A stretch of 64,000 nucleotides of DNA from NCBI RefSeq assembly GCF_002113885.1, contig NW_018408551.1, positions 1,017,206 to 1,081,205 on the forward strand. Reading direction: 5' to 3'. The notes below the pieces were generated by a model. It ran no database searches. It saw nothing but the letters and a program-made list of their open reading frames with translations, and was not told the DNA's origin. A program made the translations under genes and the position numbers. This DNA is from Mizuhopecten yessoensis. Its lineage: Eukaryota. Each line of letters begins with the position of its first letter. Position 1 is the first letter of the stretch. Shown here piece by piece: positions 6,067-64,000 of the stretch.

Positions 6067-6153
6067 CCTTTTCACGTCCGATCGGGGAATCAAACCCCAG
6101 CCGCCTTGGTGAAAGGCGAGTGCGCTATCCACTGAGCCACCCCGACCGCCCCC
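6064..6153 (-). mobile_element. V-domain SINE, 5' tRNA-derived head (other half of 4176-4322)
   Basis: Minus strand ggggcggtcggggTGGCTCAGTGGatagcgcactcgcctttcaccaaggcggctggGGTTTGATTCCccgatcgg: Pol III A box (6129-6139) and B box (6086-6096). Same orientation as the V-domain half. Confidence 0.88.
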
Positions 6154-6519
6154 TAGTTAGTTTCGAGATTTTAAAAAATCTCACTGTTTAAAACATGGAC
6201 ATTAAAATAACATTGATCTTTTCAAAAACTATAAAGACACATACCTTTTTAAATACATTGATCATAGGATTCCCCAAAGGTTATTCTATATTAGTTTTCC
6301 TTTCTTATATTATTGTATTAAAATATGACTACAATTGTAATTGTAAAAAGCCGGATGAAAGCATTTTGTGTCTTTGTTCGATTCAAAATACTGAAAATCT
6401 GGAAACTAATTGTTTCGGCGAAGACTGGAGGAGAAAATGATAACGACTTATAGCATATATTGACCTTCCCGAATCAGGCGTTTCAGGCCTTATTGTGAAA
6501 TAGGGATTCACTCAAATTA

Positions 6520-6970
6520 AAATATAGCATTTTAATATAGATGATATTGAGTCAAAATCAAAATGTCTATGATATGCAGTGTAACATCTAAAATGTCTGT
6601 TATAGAGTAAAACCTCACAATGAAGAGAGTAGCATTACAGTATCTTTGATATGCATTATGGCAGCTCACTGTCTATAATGAAGAGCATAGCATCACAATG
6701 TCTACAATATACAATAAAGTAGCTCATCTCATTGTTTTTGATATTTAGTATTGCTTTTCAATATCTATGTATACAATATAGCATTTCAAAGACTTCCATG
6801 AAGAGTACAGACGTACAGTGCCTTTTATTAAATAATAACTTTTCAATGGGTATATTTTACAACACAGTCGGTAAAGCCTCCCAATTTATAACCTCTTAAT
6901 TTCTTTAATTGTAAGCATAACCTTTCAATGTCTATATGTTATTCTAAAACCTCTATGTGTCTATAACCTA
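6520..6970. repeat. Highly decayed ~29-30-bp tandem repeat
   Basis: Recurring caatgtctat...atagcat-like segments at roughly 30-bp spacing. Confidence 0.5.
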
Positions 6971-7712
6971 CAATAAAAAAATAAAGTCCATATTCAAGGG
7001 AGAAGGGACACTTCGATTCTATCGTTACAGTAACGTGATACAAATATTTAGGACCTTATGACTAATACCATAAGAATCTCTGTAATAAAAACATAAAGCA
7101 TTACTGTTTTAGTAGAAATTGTCAGTTACTGTGAACTAGCAACAAACAAAATGTCTCGACATCAAAGTTATAACTCCACGGCTAAAGTTTACAAAAGGCC
7201 GCATGGAATTTTTAGCTTTTGAAAAACGAAAGAACAATCAATATATGATCTCCCATACAGATGATCAAAAACTGTGACACGATCTTTTATCTTTTCAACT
7301 TGAAAGAGCCTGACTCTGTGATATAACGGGCAGATTTCCCGGACTGTCAGTTCGACGTCACATTTAAGCTCCGTACGTTTTGTCAAACGTTTACACCTCC
7401 CCTTAAAAGGTCTTATCTAACATGACTATACATTTAAAATATCAGATATACCAGTATTACACAAAAATGTTGGTAGGTAATCAGATTTCATAAAATTCAT
7501 AAAATGCAAGATGTTACATCAATTTGAAATGAAAGAAGTGATATTTCAATGAAAAGCATATAGTATAGTTATAACCAGTGATCATTTAACATACTTGATG
7601 TGACATGCATATTCTGTATAGAATACATTAAAATTATTTCATGTTTAAATTTGAATTTATTTCCCCTGTATCTTTTTGAAGGGATGCCAAGTGTGAGTTG
7701 CACCGGGCTCAT

Positions 7713-8050
7713 CCCTCTAACAACATGTGACCTCCCGCAGGAGTGCAGATTGTACCCTCTAACAACATGTGACCTCCCACAGGAGTGCATATTGTATCCT
7801 CTAACAACATGTGACCTCCCACAGGAGTACAGATTGTACCCTCTAACAACATGTGACCTCCCACAGGAGTGCAAATTGTATCCTCTAACAACATGTGACC
7901 TCCCACAGGAGCGCAGATTGTACCCTCTAACAACATGTGCCCTCCCACAGGAGTGCATATTGTATCCTCTAACAACATGTGACCTCCCACAGGAGTACAG
8001 ATTGTACCCTCTAACAACATGTGACCTCCCACAGGAGTGCAGATTGTACC
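7713..8050. repeat. Minisatellite, 42-bp unit x8
   Basis: Unit ccctctaacaacatgtgacctcccacaggagtgcagattgta, near-identical copies. Confidence 0.98.
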
Positions 8051-9412
8051 TTATACGATGAGGCTGTGGTATTTTCAGTTTTACTTTGGTATTGTTTTAT
8101 TTATTTTTTCAAATGGGTTGATTTTTTTCTCCGATCTTGAAAATCACAATAAACACTAACTGTATCTGTGTATACAGTATGCCTGAATGGGACCGAAAAG
8201 TCTAGACGGAGAAAACGTCATTGTAATAATCCGTTTATTCCCGGATTGACCGTTCCGGATCCCCTATCTTGTACACAAATATTCTTTTTGTTATTACCTA
8301 CTTAACATGTAAAATATGCGGTTGAAAAATTCCTATTTGAACATACTTAAATCAAGATGATAGCTTGAAAATCATCAGCGACTTGCCGGCTTATCGTCTC
8401 CGGCGCATAGAGTACTGGTCAGTATAACAAGAGCGATCAAATTATGTTTTGTTTTTACTCTTAACAGCAAATAATATGTTTTGTTCATTAAGTGCATAAT
8501 GACCAACATACAATCTTGAAAATGAACAAAATCACGTGGTTGTTTCATTTCAAATAAAATGTAAAAACACAGCAGCAATAAATTTTAAATGAACACGTTT
8601 CGACTGACAATGCTTAAGATTGGAAGGGCCAGTTAAACTCTGATCGTATTGTGTATTTGTTTTTCAATGATCTATTTAGTCCATGTAGACCATCGGTGAT
8701 CCTCTTATTTCTGGGATGCCATCCGAGCACAGGTGTTCGAGTGGTTCCGGATGATGGTTTTTGAATATTGTCGCTTATGTCATTAATGGGATTGAATGTC
8801 CCTTATATCATGTCACTGTCAGTTTCGAATTTATTTCTATTGTTGAATATTATGTCAAAGTTCCTTTCGTTTTCTACGTTATATAAGCTGAAGTGGAAAT
8901 ATTTACACTAAGTCAGTATAGGTAGCTAATTAAAACAGTATTTACTCACCTCTCAACACTTAGATGTATCTTGAAATAAAATCTAGACAAAATACAGAAA
9001 CGGTCTTTCATATCAAATCACAAAGGGTCAAGAGGCATTACTAGGGTTTACATTGAAGATGTGGACACCAACAGAGCTTACCATGATGTCAAACCTTCAA
9101 GACGACTGCGATGTTTAATCGATGTGTATGTAAGACTGCGACTGTCGCTGTCATTCGTATGTATCGCACTATAACCGTCCTAGATAAATAGATGTGTCGA
9201 AAGATCAGGATAATAAAACAAACAAAGAACGACGTTTTTAATACATTAACTTAATAGACAGAATTCATGGAAACAGGCCACCATTCTCCGCCAAACAGCA
9301 TCATTACGGTGTATTTAACATTGAAATAATCTTTCATTTCATTGCTATGTTTGAATGAGTAATGATAAGTGAAGTACATTAGATTCAAATTATATCTTAA
9401 ACCGTTGCTAAT

Positions 9413-9843
9413 ACATTGATCATACGATATGTTTATTATAGTCCATCATGTGTAAAACAGACATTGATCATGCGATGTTTATTATAGTCCATCATGTGTA
9501 AAACAGACATTGATCATACGATATGTTTATTATAGTCCATCATGTGTAAAACAGACATTGATCATGCGATGTTTATTATAGTCCATCATGTGTAAAACAG
9601 ACATTGATCATGCGATATGTTTATTATAGTCCATCATGTGTAAAACAGACATTGATCATGCGATGTTTATTATAGTCCATCGTGTGTAAAACAGACATTG
9701 ATCATACGAAATGTTTATTATAGTCCATCATGTGTAAAACAGACATTGATCATGCGATATGTTTATTATAGTCCATCATGTGTAAAACAGACATTCATCA
9801 TACGATATGTTTATTATAGTCCATCATGTGTAAAACAGACATT
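9413..9843. repeat. Minisatellite, 48/46-bp unit x9
   Basis: Unit acattgatcat(a/g)cgat(at)gtttattatagtccatcatgtgtaaaacag; unit lengths 48,46,48,46,48,46,48,48,48. Confidence 0.98.

Positions 9844-59734: not shown

Positions 59735-59767
<33 letters not shown>
59735..59767. repeat. (AT)n microsatellite
   Basis: About 16 AT dinucleotides. Confidence 0.98.
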
Positions 59768-59772
<5 letters not shown>

Positions 59773-61040
59773 CACACAGGTACAAATACACAACTTTAAA
59801 AAAGCACCGTTCCAAATCTTACTGACTGATCTTTAACCTTCGTTTATTCCTTCTATTTACTTTACAAGGATTGTGAAGCGCGTAATTTTGCCAATGCGTA
59901 TTTTTGAGAAATAACTAATAACTCACTGACAAAGGCAGACCTGTTTATACGAACAATATAAACGAAGTTAAAGTTGGGTAGAAAAACGTCCAATGACCTT
60001 AACTCTGCCGTTTTTTTTAATCATTTTTCATTTTTTCATTTTTTTTTTGTGAGGGTGTAATCAGTTTCACGATATTCCTTTACTTAGAGAAAAATCATTA
60101 ACCCAGACAGATTTTTCCACTAGAGAGCAGTCAGGGAAATTAAAAAAATGAAGAGACATTTATTTTACCTTCATTAATGCATTCGTGAAGCCATGTCGGC
60201 TTACAAAAATCTATACCGCTCTGAACATACCCTACTGCCTTTAAAGCGAGATAACTCTTACCATCTACAAACATAAAAGGTCGATTTCACTCGAATTTCA
60301 TTTTGCCTTTGAAAGCTAAGCATCAACCTAGTATTCTTCAGTACAGGTGCACTAAGGAAATATCAGTCTGGAAGGCATCCTATCATTGATCAAACCTAGC
60401 CCCGGTATATGGGTAAACAAGTGACGTTTTTTTAAACAGTGAGTGAACAATTATTATCAGTCATTTTAACAATCATAGAAAACGGCAGACAAAAAACACA
60501 GAGAAATCTAGCATAGCCTAAAACAGCATGATGGGCCCCCAGGAAAATTAGGATAATGCAGACTCAGAAAATTCTGAGTGTGGACAGGTATCCCCTACTA
60601 CAAATTGCATTTCCTCCAATCAGATAATACTCTATGTACTCTTGGTACCTTTGGATGTATTTTTGGTCCCTTTGATCTGGATTTAGGACTGATACGTACT
60701 ACATTTGTGTATATCAGGCGTGGATAGAAACCTCGTATCCATACTGTTGTAGTAAAACTACCTAGGACACGAAGGGGAATACACCTGTAATTAAGTATGC
60801 ATGTGATAACAGCTGACGGACAGGGAGACATTTGATTGGTCCGTGACGGGTCACTCAAATAGGACACATGGTGAGATCAGGATTGGCACGAGATTACCCG
60901 AGAATAGGCAGTCATGTACACGTGCGCTGGTAGCACAAGCATTAGAGGTAAGTCATTCTAAAGTTTCAGGATTTTATAAGTATTTGTAAAAGTTATATAA
61001 AAGTACCTAGTGTCTTTTATACAGTAAATGTAATGTATAG

Positions 61041-61242
61041 GAATTATTATTATTATTTAGATTAAGGGTAATTACTGTATTTTTGGTTATGTAATAGCCA
61101 TGTGAATTAATAATTGAATAATTAAATTTGAACAATAAATTGAATTTGAACAATAATTGAATTTGAACAATAATTGAATTATTATTATTATATGAATTGA
61201 AGGTAATTACTGTATTTTTGGTTATGTAAAAGCCATGTGAAT
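61041..61242. repeat. 67-bp direct repeat (period 135) enclosing three 17-18-bp repeats
   Basis: gaattattattatta...ggtaattactgtatttttggttatgtaa.agccatgtgaat at 61041 and 61176; aatttgaacaat x3 in between. Confidence 0.9.
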
Positions 61243-61510
61243 ACTTTAAGGACATTGAAGGTCATTAGTCAATAATGTTAGTAAAATATGATTGAGATTA
61301 AAAAAATATTATTTAGGTTATTGATTAATGTCATTGTACCAGGGTTTTAATACTATATTATTTTCATTTATAGAATATGATACAAATCATCCTTTCATCA
61401 TGAGGATGAAAATGAAAGAGTCGGTAGACAAGCCCTTGTCCATTTGTAGGGGTATATGTTGATAGGTTTTACTTTTCTTATCTATTGGAATGTACATATA
61501 TATTTAAATG

Positions 61511-61900
61511 CAACTAATGAGACATTCCGTAGCAGATTGGAGATTTTTCACATTTACCGTGCCTGATTTCCAAATGCAGATGTTCCACGTTTTTGATATC
61601 TCTCGTTGACTCACTTTATATGATAGTGCATCTTGCGCAAGAATAGGTCCTCTACATCAGCGTTCCTTGTCCGCGATTCTCTCAGCTCAATTGCTGCCTT
61701 CGGCTGTCTTTAGCCGAGGGGACTATTGGTTTTATATAATAGCTATATTTTCTCTATAGTATATCAATTCTATCTTCTTGTAATATGATGTATATGTACA
61801 TGTAACTGTTCTGTTTCACTGTGTCTTGAAAAAGGAGCGGGTCGCTCCGAAAATTTGACAACCTAAACTTGTCCACACTGTTAGAATTACTTCTTTGCCC
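61511..61900 (+). mobile_element. 390-bp non-coding Penelope-like (pseudo-LTR) insertion with 16-bp TSD
   Basis: catatatatttaaatg is duplicated exactly at 61495-61510 and 61901-61916; the insert has a hammerhead fold near its 3' end. Confidence 0.8.
61822..61860 (+). ncRNA. Minimal type I hammerhead ribozyme motif, U3-A8 core variant
   Basis: Stem I TGTC/GACA, core TTGAAAA plus an extra A, stem II GGAGCG-ggt-CGCTCC, GAA, palindromic stem III AATT, cleavage nucleotide T61856. Confidence 0.7.
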
Positions 61901-62599
61901 CATATATATTTAAATGAGTATATCTCCGGGGAGCTAAACTGTATGTGTAAATTACCATATGGTATATCTTCAATAATTAATCATATTCAATAATGAAAGA
62001 TAGCTGTATTCTTTCGAAAAGTATTTCAGAATATACATAAGGAATGGAATAACATTGATAAAATATATGTTATGTGAAACAAGTATATTTTAAGAATAGG
62101 GTATAATTGTATAATAGTTTGAGTAAGAGTAATTTCCCTTGGTATGTACGAGAGTGGCATGTGTGTACACACCTGTTTGGAACTATGTTTACTCGGTTAC
62201 AAAAAAACAGGGACATGAGAATCAACCACATGAATCTGACATTTAAACTGTAAGTCAATTGACAACATGCGTCTACAAAGTACATCTGTAGCTTATGAAG
62301 ATGTTTATACTAAAGTACCTCGCAAATGCTTGTTTACACTTAATTATCAGATTACTGTGTATCAATGCTGTCTAGGACGTATATAACTGTACATATGTTT
62401 GGCATAGTCCCGATGTATGGAGTAATCCTATCAGTTACCAAAATCTACATCCAGTAACAATCAACAAGTACAGCGTAATTCATAGATATTACAAAAGCGT
62501 GAGACCGGCCTGATTGTAACTCTGTTTTTTACACCAAAATTAGAAGGTACTAAAACATATTAAGTATGCATGCATATTATTTGATCATAATCGAATCAA

Positions 62600-64000
62600 A
62601 CCGTTAGTTTTTTCGTTTTTAGTTGGATTATAAATTGTCTCTTCTTTCTGTCCCTTTTTAACTTGTATTTCTCTTTTCTCCTCGATTACGTCATCACTTG
62701 TCAGCAGTCTATGTGAAGTGTTTCTTTTCCTCTGGGTGACTTTCCACTTGCTTTTGGGGGCAAAAACAAATTTTCAATGTCATTGTTCCAAACGCTGTGC
62801 TCAATCATGTCCGAGTCCATACCAAGTTCCAATCGATCGCGGCTTATTAAGCTGATCAACAGTTCTGGGTTATGTATATCTGGCAAAGACTCAAATGGAA
62901 GTTGAACTTGTTCATTAACTTATGGTATCGTCGGTTAGGCAGTGTCTACAGTAAACGCAGCAACCGATTCTTCGTGAGCAAGGAAGAGGGGGATACTGGG
63001 TTTGAGGCCAACTGCTATCTGAGATGTTATGGTCGTAGGTACAGCAGCAACAGTAGACGCTTCAGGAGAGATGGAGAGAGGGACGCTCTGCTGTTGTGGT
63101 TGCTAAAGGTACAGCAGCAACAGTAGACGCTTAAAGAGAGATGGAGAGAGGGACGCTCTGCTGTTGTGGTTGCTTAAGGCACAGCAGAAACAGTAGACGC
63201 TTAAAGAGAGATGGAGAGAGGGACGCTTTGCTGTTGTGGTTGCTAAAGGTACAGCAGCAACAGTAGACGCTTCAGGAGAGATGGAGAGAGGGACGCTCTG
63301 CTGTTGTGGTTGCTAAAGGTACAGCACCATCCGTAGACGTTTCCGGAGAGGTTGAGACGGGAATACGGGGAGACAATAAACTTTGCTCGGATGTTGCCGT
63401 AGATGTCGGACGATCTGTTGGCTGTGATGGGGCGAAGGACTCCTGTGAGATAGCTGTGGGGTTGAATGGGAATACTCCACACGCCTTAAACCCGCTCACA
63501 ATGTTCTTGTGTGTGAACGAAGTATCCCATGCTGTCTTAACTAACCCAGGAAAACTCCAATTTGTTACTATGTTGAGCGGATTTTGACCAAGATAGTCAG
63601 AACACGCAGTGTTGTAGGCTGTACTAAACGGTCCCAAGACGGACCTATCAAGGGGAGGGAGGCATAATATGGATACGTAATTTTCTTCAGCTGTTCGAGG
63701 ATAGCTAATGACTCGTGAGATGAATGCCCATCTAAAAGCAATAATTGAGGCCTTTCATCTCCACATTCTTTTAAAAAAAACATCCCGAAACCACTCCTGT
63801 CGGCCATCCAACCGTTATCTTGATTGGTCCATTTTGTCCCGGATGGAGCGGCCGCCGTGTTAAAACCATGTATGGACATGTTTGTCTTGCCCTTCACTAC
63901 GAACATAGGGGACATTCACGCACGCCATTATGGAGACATTTGTCCTTTTATTCCCAGTAGGACTGACAACATTTTTAGAAGAACTGGCGAATGCTCAAAA
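62600..64000 (-). pseudogene. Decayed pogo/Fot1-type DDE_1 transposase (runs off the window end)
   Basis: Motifs NVSIMACVN, PMFVVKGK, NGWM, RPQLLLLDGHSSH, CLPP..LDRSVLGPF, NIVSGFKACGVFPFNP and RLLTSDDVI across frames; frameshifts and deletions. Confidence 0.92.
63038..63330. repeat. 70-bp tandem repeat x4 plus a partial copy inside the transposase remnant
   Basis: ggtacagcagcaacagtagacgc...gttgctaaa starting at 63038, 63108, 63178 and 63248; partial copy at 63318. Confidence 0.97.

What the first reader, a model, noticed from the sequence alone, without database searches (positions are those of the whole stretch)
61495..61916. TSD-flanked 390-bp non-coding element carrying a variant minimal hammerhead ribozyme
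An exact 16-bp duplication delimits the insert. Near its 3' end, TGTC-TTGAAAA-A-GGAGCG-ggt-CGCTCC-GAA-AATT-T-GACA has the topology of Penelope-associated minimal type I hammerheads. The C3-G8 tertiary pair is swapped to U3-A8, an extra A precedes stem II, and stem III is reduced to the palindrome AATT (usually ACGT-like), which implies cleavage only as a dimer, after a UUU triplet (61856). CUGANGA-based searches would miss it. A second 9-bp hairpin lies at 61697-61720. It may be a solo pseudo-LTR/truncated PLE or a retrozyme-like non-autonomous family targeting TA-rich sites.
Basis: partly seen in the sequence, partly recalled or inferred. Interest (0 to 1): 0.8.

Follow-up and report, generated by a model that had tools for sequence, protein, structure and literature searches.

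The report
Truncated Penelope retrotransposon with variant hammerhead
This is a dead, 5'-truncated copy of a scallop Penelope-like retrotransposon whose tail carries the "minimal" hammerhead ribozyme motif typical of such elements, in a U3-A8 core variant already described in 2014, so it is real but ordinary.

Summary
That covers the exact 16-bp duplication (61495-61510 and 61901-61916), the hammerhead-like motif (61822-61860) and a second hairpin (61697-61720).

[quoted passage not shown] The family has hundreds of copies in this scallop genome. The copies are 5'-truncated at different points and all end in ...GCCCCATATA(TA)n. Their target-site duplications are 9-20 bp at TA-rich sites. Paralogous empty sites confirm that the window copy is an insertion.

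The same motif sits about 40-60 nt before the (TA)n tail in related PLEs of Pecten, Pinctada, Ostrea and a metagenome contig. Stems I and II covary. The core varies only at N7, H17 and the 3/8 pair, which reads U-A, C-G or U·G.

Cervera & de la Peña (2014, PMC4209133) already described PLE "min-HHRs". Their description includes the bulged nucleotide before helix II, the palindromic helix III, action as dimers and the U3-A8 covariant. This is therefore a new member of a known kind. Cleavage is untested, and this solo truncated copy is probably inert.

The parts
61495..61510 (.). Left copy of the target-site duplication (CATATATATTTAAATG)
   Evidence: Exact repeat of 61901-61916. Paralogous empty sites on contigs C3067 and C1809 carry a single TATATATTTAAATG followed by AGTATATCT.
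61511..61900 (+). 5'-truncated copy of a Penelope-like element. It holds only the last ~390 bp of the ~720-bp 3'UTR, with no ORF and no promoter region.
   Evidence: It is 93-96% identical to at least 42 scored copies out of 1470 first-look candidates. Other copies extend upstream by variable lengths into an RT + GIY-YIG ORF. It differs from the family majority at 11 of 388 positions, or 2.7%.
61697..61720 (+). Conserved 3'UTR hairpin (CCTTCGGCT / AGCCGAGGG core), function unknown
   Evidence: MFE -17.6 kcal/mol, z -3.9. The same hairpin lies about 130 nt upstream of the HHR in the P. maximus element L072, where the U·G pair has become U-A.
61822..61860 (+). Minimal type I hammerhead motif (PLE min-HHR), U3-A8 variant. 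Helix I is 61822-25/61857-60. Core U3U4G5A6A7A8A9 is 61826-32 and the bulged A is 61833. Helix II is 61834-39/61843-48 with loop 61840-42. G12A13A14 is 61849-51, palindrome A15.1A15.2U16.2U16.1 is 61852-55 and H17 is U61856.
   Evidence: Homologous motifs sit at the same place in related PLEs. Covariation is strong. The genome holds 683 exact pattern matches against 15 in the control.
61856..61857 (+). Predicted (untested) self-cleavage site, 3' of U17
   Evidence: Inferred from hammerhead numbering applied to the motif. There is no experimental evidence.
61861..61900 (+). 3'-terminal spacer of the element (ACCTAAACTTGTCCACACTGTTAGAATTACTTCTTTGCCC), leading into the CATATA(TA)n terminus
   Evidence: Conserved in all copies, and across species as ...ACACTGTTTGAATTACTTCTTTGCCCCATATA in P. 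maximus L072.
61901..61916 (.). Right copy of the target-site duplication. Its first eight bases (CATATATA) coincide with the element's own terminal CATATA(TA)n.

Best explanation
Window 61511-61900 is a dead-on-arrival, 5'-truncated insertion of a canonical Penelope-like retrotransposon. The parent element is about 3.5 kb, with a single RT + C-terminal GIY-YIG ORF that carries the CX4CxxC linker and the CCHH motif, making it Neptune/Nematis-type.

The inferred insertion mechanism has four steps:
- The element's GIY-YIG nuclease nicked a TA-rich target.
- The (UA)n-like 3' end of the element RNA paired with the target.
- Target-primed reverse transcription stopped about 390 nt in.
- Staggered second-strand cleavage produced the roughly 8-16-bp duplication.

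The fragment carries the element's conserved 3'-terminal module, which is a hairpin, then a minimal type I hammerhead, then a ~40-45-nt spacer, then the TA tail. The hammerhead is the PLE 'min-HHR' in its U3-A8 form, in which the C3-G8 tertiary Watson-Crick pair is replaced by U-A. It has the usual bulged A between A9 and G10.1, a 6-bp helix II and a 4-bp helix I. Helix III is present only as the palindrome AAUU, so an active fold needs two copies to pair, for example the two pLTR copies of a tandem PLE transcript.

In the parent element the motif most likely processes multimeric PLE transcripts at low efficiency. At this locus it has no partner copy and no promoter, so it is most likely inert.

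Shown here: the insertion, the element's identity, the homology of the motif and the selection on its helices and on the 3-8 pair. Inferred only: catalysis and its role in the element's life cycle.
For: Element identity:
- L031:807-2261:- translates to RVT_1 (PF00078) plus GIY-YIG (PF01541) and ends ~720 bp before the common 3' end.
- The 760-aa ORF in L049 gives the same domains.
- The nearest proteins are Pecten maximus PLE-like ORFs at 70-76% identity.
- Copies share the 3' end ...GCCCCATATA(TA)n, while their 5' ends are scattered over the element.
- Other copies have TSDs of 9-20 bp that start in TA-rich sequence.
- Paralogous empty sites exist for the window copy.
- Relatives show pLTR, tandem or inverted arrangements: L072 has an 805-bp pLTR, L073 a 984-bp pLTR, L075 tandem units and L077 inverted copies.

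Hammerhead homology:
- Between scallop genera only the last ~88 bp of the 3'UTR aligns, and it contains the motif.
- A descriptor left open at positions 3 and 8 finds one motif about 40-60 nt before the TA tail in most of the related PLE loci scanned.
- Pinctada has CUGAAGA-A-GGAGC...GCUCU-GAA-AAUU-U, which is C3-G8 on otherwise the same architecture.
- Ostrea has U3-A8 and U3·G8 copies. Metagenome contig L080 has U3-A8 with an ACGU palindrome and C17.
- Clade L073/L075/L076 has CUGAUGA-A...GAA-AGCGCU-U.
- In all of these, U4 G5 A6 A9, the bulged A, G10.1, G12 A13 A14, A15.1 and U16.1 are invariant. N7, H17, loop 2 and the stems vary.
- 97% of cells are paired and 9 of 13 pairs show double changes. 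0 of 500 shuffles reach the observed values, and slid controls pair only 33-47%.
- On the RT tree the Pinctada C-G element is nested among U-A lineages, which requires at least two coordinated switches.
- In this genome U3/A8 is the family state with 683 matches. The mixed states C3/A8 (23) and U3/G8 (11) are near control level.

Literature: PMC4209133 describes the same architecture and the U3-A8 covariant in PLE pLTRs. PMC8557442 places HHRs near PLE 3' ends and describes (TA)n targeting.
Against: - No cleavage data exist for this motif.
- Published min-HHRs cleave only weakly in vitro, and only as dimers or with an extended helix III (PMC4209133).
- The AAUU intermolecular helix is predicted to be unstable, at +2.2 kcal/mol alone against -8.3 for the AGCGCU of relatives. 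Forming it does not lower the energy of the dimer (-18.4 vs -19.2).
- All genomic copies end ~45-50 nt downstream of the predicted cleavage site, so the 3' HHR did not define the 3' end of the reverse-transcribed RNA.
- No Rfam hammerhead model matches at E<=10. This carries little weight, because the same models also miss the canonical-core relatives.
- The sequences used for the covariation count were partly picked by a descriptor that demands stems, so the pairing percentage is inflated by ascertainment. The double changes and the unconstrained 3/8 positions are not affected.
- Each foreign lineage is represented by one to three copies only.
- Clade assignment rests on linker motifs, not on a phylogeny with reference PLEs.
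Confidence: 0.88

Rival explanations
1. The hammerhead fold, or just its helix II hairpin and flanks, is kept in these PLEs for a job other than self-cleavage. One candidate is a recognition or positioning signal for the element's own RT/EN on the 3' end of the RNA during target-primed reverse transcription. On this reading the U3-A8/AAUU form is catalytically dead or nearly so.
For: The motif sits a fixed ~40-60 nt before the TA tail where priming starts, in every lineage examined. Copies end downstream of the cleavage site, so cleavage at the 3' copy is not used to make the template's end. The AAUU helix III is predicted to be unstable. Published min-HHRs have very low activity, and their authors do not exclude other functions (PMC4209133). 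N-terminal-EN PLEs proliferate without canonical HHRs (PMC8557442).
Against: The pattern of constraint is the one expected of a hammerhead catalytic core. Seven single-stranded core bases are invariant, N7 and H17 vary, the 3-8 pair is kept by double change, and 15.x/16.x stay palindromic. A protein-binding hairpin would not obviously need all of these.
Confidence: 0.25
2. The insert belongs to a non-autonomous, retrozyme-like family of ~390-bp units with one hammerhead each, which spread through circular RNA and borrow PLE proteins.
For: The size of ~390 bp is close to mussel retrozyme repeats of 350-390 bp (PMC7229834). This genome also holds many canonical type I HHRs in short repeats. One locus (L012) has a second truncated copy directly behind the first.
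Against: The family's copies have a common 3' end and scattered 5' ends that run continuously into the RT/GIY-YIG ORF. There is no preferred 390-bp unit and no tandem array at this locus. The longest copies are ~3.5 kb and coding.
Confidence: 0.03
3. The hammerhead likeness is a chance resemblance around an ordinary GC-rich hairpin in a repeat.
For: Rfam finds no hammerhead. The core departs from CUGANGA at two positions and has an inserted base. Helix I is only 4 bp.
Against: Chance expectation is 0.01 per 64 kb for a hit of this quality. The motif recurs at the homologous position in PLEs whose proteins are only 45-57% identical, with compensatory changes in both stems and at 3/8, and canonical CUGAUGA/CUGAAGA versions share the same bulged A. 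Rfam also misses those canonical-core versions.
Confidence: 0.02

Closest known systems
min-HHR of metazoan Penelope-like elements, including the U3-A8 covariant of Schistosoma mansoni Cercyon PLEs (Cervera & de la Peña 2014, Mol Biol Evol 31:2941, PMC4209133)
   Same: It lies in the PLE 3' end/pLTR. Helix I is short (4 bp) and helix II long (6 bp). There is an unpaired nucleotide between A9 and G10.1, a G10.1-C11.1 pair, a palindromic 15.2-16.2 with no helix III loop so that a dimer is required, and U3-A8 in place of C3-G8. Most copies occur singly in truncated elements.
   Different: The host is a pectinid scallop, and bivalve relatives share the motif. The main text of that paper does not mention molluscs, and its supplement is not held. 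Helix III here is the all-A/U palindrome AAUU, the weakest possible version. U3-A8 is the fixed state of the whole high-copy family, and of its relatives in Pecten, Ostrea and a metagenome contig. It is not a minority variant as in Schistosoma.
Canonical C-terminal-EN Penelope-like elements with the CX2-5CxxC linker (Neptune/Nematis type; Arkhipova 2006 as summarised in Craig et al. 2021, PMC8557442)
   Same: It has a single ORF with RT then GIY-YIG, two Cys between GIY and YIG (CCHH), and a CNKKVCKLC linker. Relatives form pLTRs, partial tandems and inverted copies. Copies show frequent 5' truncation, TSDs of variable length, insertion at (TA)n-like sites and an HHR near the 3' end.
   Different: The clade was not placed on a reference phylogeny here. 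The HHR core would not match the 'cuganga' descriptor used in that paper.
Metazoan non-LTR retrozymes (Cervera & de la Peña 2020, NAR 48:5054, PMC7229834)
   Same: Both involve a type I hammerhead with a palindromic or weak helix III, repeats a few hundred bp long, and a link to PLEs.
   Different: Retrozymes are non-coding tandem units with canonical cores that are expressed as circular RNAs. This is a solo truncated piece of an autonomous element with a variant core.

Membership tests
Penelope-like element (C-terminal EN+) | Single ORF with reverse transcriptase followed by a GIY-YIG endonuclease | tested here: met
   Longer copies of the family give PF00078 and PF01541 (L031 fragment; L049 760-aa ORF, where GIY-YIG scores 22.1 bits, just under the 22.6 cut-off). 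The window copy itself holds none of the ORF.
Penelope-like element (C-terminal EN+) | CCHH motif with two Cys between GIY and YIG. A CX2-5CxxC linker marks the Neptune/Nematis type. | tested here: met
   Read directly in the translation...CNKKVCKLC...VVYLITCNKCKLQYVGET...NNHRC...ARHF. The criteria come from PMC8557442. Clade phylogeny was not run.
Penelope-like element (C-terminal EN+) | Pseudo-LTRs from partial tandem or inverted copies | tested here: met
   L072 has an 805-bp pLTR at 98.6% identity. L073 has a 984-bp pLTR plus an inverted copy, L075 full tandem units and L077 inverted copies. In the window's own genome, L050 has a 3'-end fragment upstream of the element and L012 has head-to-tail copies. 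There is none at the window locus.
Penelope-like element (C-terminal EN+) | 5' truncation, variable TSD, moderate target preference | tested here: met
   The 5' ends are scattered and TSDs are 9-20 bp at TA-rich sites. The window TSD is 16 bp, and paralogous empty sites exist.
Hammerhead ribozyme, type I, PLE min-HHR | Three-helix junction: helices I and II in cis, helix III as a palindrome formed between two copies | tested here: met
   Helices I (4 bp) and II (6 bp) are the MFE fold. Both helices and the palindrome covary among relatives.
Hammerhead ribozyme, type I, PLE min-HHR | Invariant core U4 G5 A6 A9 / G12 A13 A14 / A15.1-U16.1, with H17 not G | tested here: met
   All are present in the window motif and invariant in 11 related sequences. 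H17 is U, C or A.
Hammerhead ribozyme, type I, PLE min-HHR | C3 and G8 of the CUGANGA box | tested here: not met
   The window has U3 and A8. This is the Watson-Crick covariant of the C3-G8 pair. It is seen as U-A, C-G or U·G in relatives and is reported as a natural PLE variant in PMC4209133. It therefore fails the classical consensus but fits the published min-HHR variant.
Hammerhead ribozyme, type I, PLE min-HHR | Unpaired nucleotide between 9 and 10.1, a G10.1-C11.1 pair, and palindromic 15.2-16.2 (features listed in PMC4209133) | tested here: met
   A61833 is the unpaired base, G61834-C61848 is the pair and AAUU is 61852-55. The bulged A is present in all relatives, including those with a canonical core.
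Hammerhead ribozyme, type I, PLE min-HHR | Site-specific self-cleavage | not testable with these tools
   This needs transcription and cleavage assays or RNA end mapping.
Hammerhead ribozyme (Rfam RF00163 and other HHR models) | Match to a curated covariance model | tested here: not met
   There is no HHR hit at E<=10 in 61000-62400. As a control, the same scan also misses the CUGAUGA/CUGAAGA min-HHRs of L073, L075 and L077, so the models do not cover this subclass.
Metazoan non-LTR retrozyme | Tandem non-coding units of ~150-400 bp, each with an HHR | tested here: not met
   The locus holds a single copy with no tandem array. The family members are truncations of a coding 3.5-kb element.

The most novel reading that the evidence does not exclude
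In a sub-clade of bivalve (possibly also amphioxus) Penelope-like elements, the hammerhead core has repeatedly switched between C3-G8 and U3-A8. It has kept every other core base while helix III shrank to AAUU. The U3-A8/AAUU form is either a working ribozyme with unusual properties, such as slow, partner-dependent or factor-dependent cleavage, or a hammerhead fold re-used for a non-cleaving role at the priming end of the element RNA.
Probability: 0.3. Interest if true: 0.5.

Novelty: new member of a known kind. Interest (0 to 1): 0.3.

Why it matters
The finding shows that consensus-based and Rfam-based annotation overlooks the hammerheads of a high-copy bivalve PLE family. The genome has at least 683 motif copies. 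The family also offers a clean natural series for the hammerhead's 3-8 tertiary pair. Related elements carry C-G, U·G or U-A on otherwise the same scaffold, and these could be compared directly at the bench. For the window itself it only explains a 390-bp insertion as ordinary transposon debris.

Tried and rejected
- Rfam scan of the region at E<=10 gave no hammerhead. This proved uninformative, because Rfam also misses canonical-core min-HHRs in relatives.
- RF00163 over the whole genome found canonical type I HHRs (GCAUCA-CUGAUGA-GUCC...GGAC-GAAAC-AGCU-GUA-UGAUGC). They lie in short ~150-bp repeats with no PLE ORF nearby and are unrelated to this family.
- The retrozyme/non-autonomous and SINE-like readings were rejected on the copy structure.
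- I looked for a second or canonical hammerhead elsewhere in the ~3.5-kb element and found none in L049.
- I looked for a canonical C3-G8 version of the same architecture in this genome. The 7 hits against 1 control hit have no convincing helix II.
- The Ostrea U3·G8 copy as an 'evolutionary intermediate' is weak. It is one of two 97%-identical copies and may be simple decay.
- Mytilus (L079, L091) gave no motif and coral (L092) gave no convincing one, perhaps because those copies are truncated. The amphioxus hit (L093) has only a 3-bp helix II, so it is kept as a lead only.
- The PMC4209133 supplement is not held, so I could not check whether mollusc examples were already listed there.
- The exhaustive protein search, structure prediction and complex prediction were not needed and not used.
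- The species of the genome was not determined. The nearest proteins are from Pecten maximus. From memory, the assembly size and contig number match the published Yesso scallop assembly, but this is unverified.

Full report
**Observation.**
- CATATATATTTAAATG occurs exactly at 61495-61510 and 61901-61916.
- Between the two copies lies TGTC-TTGAAAA-A-GGAGCG-GGT-CGCTCC-GAA-AATT-T-GACA at 61822-61860.
- A strong hairpin lies at 61697-61720 (-17.6 kcal/mol, z -3.9).
- The 47-nt stretch around the motif has helix I plus helix II as its minimum-free-energy structure (-13.8 kcal/mol).
- A descriptor written for this architecture finds only this one hit in the 64-kb window on either strand. Markov-1 random sequence gives 0.17 loose hits and 0.01 hits of this quality per window.

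**What the insert is.**
- The 422-bp stretch has at least 42 scored matches at 93-96% identity among 1470 first-look candidates. The genome is 988 Mb in 82,659 contigs.
- Thirty copies aligned with their flanks all share the 3' end ...CTTCTTTGCCCCATATA(TA)n. Most continue upstream of the window copy's start by different lengths.
- The longer copies run into an open frame that ends ~720 bp before the 3' end. It translates to reverse transcriptase (PF00078) followed by a GIY-YIG endonuclease (PF01541).
- The translation shows the two cysteines between GIY and YIG (VVYLITCNKCKLQYVGET) and a CNKKVCKLC linker. Craig et al. 2021 (PMC8557442) give these as marks of canonical PLE endonucleases and of the Neptune/Nematis type. 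I did not run a clade phylogeny.
- The longest copy I reached (L049, about 6110-9654) is ~3.5 kb.
- The nearest proteins in public data are two Pecten maximus ORFs at 70-76% identity, followed by many bivalve and other invertebrate PLE ORFs at 40-57%. The genome is therefore a pectinid scallop's, but the species was not established.
- Relatives show the classical PLE arrangements. L072 has an 805-bp pseudo-LTR, L073 a 984-bp pLTR plus an inverted copy, L075 full tandem units and L077 inverted copies.

The window insert (61511-61900) is therefore a 5'-truncated copy that holds only the distal 3'UTR. It is not a non-autonomous 390-bp family and not a recombinational solo pLTR.

**Insertion and TSD.**
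- Other truncated copies have direct repeats of 9-20 bp. These begin in TA-rich sequence and merge with the element's own terminal CATATA.
- Of the window's 16 bp, the first eight (CATATATA) are therefore ambiguous between element and target, and TTTAAATG is unambiguously target.
- The two flanks of the insert belong to an older dispersed repeat.
- In paralogous copies on contigs C3067 and C1809 the flanks are contiguous, with a single TATATATTTAAATG followed by AGTATATCT. This is a paralogous empty site.
- The window copy differs from the family majority at 11 of 388 positions. One of these (61841, A>G) lies in loop 2 of the hammerhead motif and touches neither the core nor the stems.

**The hammerhead motif.**
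- Between the window family and its two Pecten maximus relatives, only the last ~88 bp of the 3'UTR can be aligned, and it contains the motif.
- The three versions differ by compensated changes in helix II (A-U to G-C; G-C to G·U to A-U) and in the closing pair of helix I (C-G to U-A). In the single-stranded core they differ only at N7 and H17.
- Scanning more distant relatives, with positions 3 and 8 left free, gave one motif about 40-60 nt before the TA tail in each of four lineages:
  - Pinctada: CUGAAGA-A-GGAGC...GCUCU-GAA-AAUU-U.
  - Ostrea: UUGAUAA and UUGAUGA copies.
  - Metagenome contig L080: UUGAUAA with an ACGU palindrome and C17, in three copies.
  - Sister clade L073/L075/L076: CUGAUGA-A-...GAA-AGCGCU-U.
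- The bulged A is present in every lineage, including the canonical-core ones.
- On an 8-sequence alignment, 97% of cells pair and 9 of 13 pairs show changes on both sides. None of 500 shuffles reaches the observed values, and slid controls pair 33-47%.
- Part of the pairing percentage comes from how the sequences were found. The double changes and the 3/8 result do not.
- On an RT tree the Pinctada C-G element is nested among U-A lineages. The 3-8 pair has therefore switched at least twice by coordinated change.
- In the scallop genome the U3/A8 pattern occurs 683 times against 15 in the control. C3/G8 of the same architecture is absent, and the mixed states are near background, as expected from the decay of dead copies.

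**Known or new.** Cervera & de la Peña 2014 (PMC4209133) defined 'min-HHRs' in the pseudo-LTRs of metazoan PLEs.
- The expected mode of action is as dimers, and activity in vitro is low.
- They explicitly report a U3-A8 covariant in Schistosoma mansoni Cercyon elements, with about 1,300 hits.
- Craig et al. 2021 place HHRs near PLE 3' ends and describe (TA)n targeting.

What is new is modest. The host group is bivalves, which the main text of the 2014 paper does not mention. U3-A8 is the fixed state of a whole high-copy family and its relatives. Helix III is the weakest possible, AAUU. Two first-reader notes from this scan (s1-509075, s1-508049) report other hammerheads in this genome. I saw canonical type I HHRs in short repeats myself, but I did not check those two loci.

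**How it probably works.**
- Shown: the insertion, the element class, the homology of the motif to hammerheads and purifying selection on its helices and on the 3-8 pair.
- Inferred: in tandem or pLTR-bearing transcripts two copies pair through the palindrome to form active hammerheads that process the RNA. This is the model of PMC4209133.
- Against robust catalysis:
  - AAUU alone is predicted at +2.2 kcal/mol, against -8.3 for the AGCGCU of relatives.
  - Forming the AAUU helix does not lower the dimer's energy.
  - Genomic copies end ~45-50 nt downstream of the predicted cleavage site, so the 3' copy does not define the template's end.
- A non-cleaving role for the fold at the priming end of the RNA therefore remains a live rival.
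- The window copy has one motif, no partner and no promoter region, so it is most likely inert.

**Verdict.** The retrozyme-like alternative is rejected. This is a new member of a known kind, of modest interest.

Noticed in passing
window 61200-61494 and 61917-62250: The DNA on both sides of the PLE fragment belongs to an older dispersed repeat family. It has 14-19 matches elsewhere in the genome at 71-88% identity, and several have the two flanks contiguous. I used these as paralogous empty sites.
   Followed up: partly
window 63272-63915 (- strand): Broken ORFs of a DDE_1 (pogo/Tigger-like) transposase. ORF 63568-63915 hits PF03184 at E 2.7e-5, and the adjacent ORF 63272-63637 reads ...KNIVSGFKACGVFPFNP... 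This probably explains the rise in GC at the end of the window.
   Followed up: partly
window 63037-63357: A tandem array of a 70-bp unit, 4.6 copies at 92% match. It overlaps the 3' part of the transposase-like region.
   Followed up: no
window 61117-61180 and 59735-59771: A 17-bp tandem repeat (3.7 copies) and an (AT)19 microsatellite lie just upstream of the insertion. This matches the TA-rich neighbourhoods these PLEs prefer.
   Followed up: no
G000 loci L051-L070 (e.g. L053:1501-1545): Canonical type I hammerheads (GCATCA-CTGATGA-GTCC..GGAC-GAAAC-AGCT-GTA-TGATGC, with ACAGCTGT palindromic helix III) sit in short ~150-bp repeats with no PLE ORF within 1.5 kb. The RF00163 search gave 101,077 rough first-look candidates, and one hit was above the gathering score.
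   Followed up: partly
L004, L010, L013 (after ...CCCCATATA); L050:5928-5990; L072:2155-2215; L071 (reverse strand) ~1330-1400: A shared ~45-nt 'tail' (..ATTTTAAGTAATTCGTATCCTACGGACATACCTCCATTAGGATCCAGTG..) follows the element's 3' end in several copies. It links an upstream 3'-end fragment to the body of the next element. It is recognisably conserved between the window genome and Pecten maximus, and it resembles the 30-40-bp PLE 'tail' described in PMC8557442.
   Followed up: partly
L093:8005-8048 (amphioxus hybrid assembly): A possible U3-A8 min-HHR (ATTC-TTGAAAA-A-GAC..GTC-GAA-ACCGGT-A-GAAT) lies ~600 nt downstream of a PLE ORF. Helix II is only 3 bp, so this is a lead rather than a finding.
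   Followed up: no
L078:7678-8549 (Ostrea edulis): The 3'UTR of the oyster relative holds a ~125-bp tandem array between the ORF and the hammerhead module, which makes its 3'UTR about 3 kb long.
   Followed up: no
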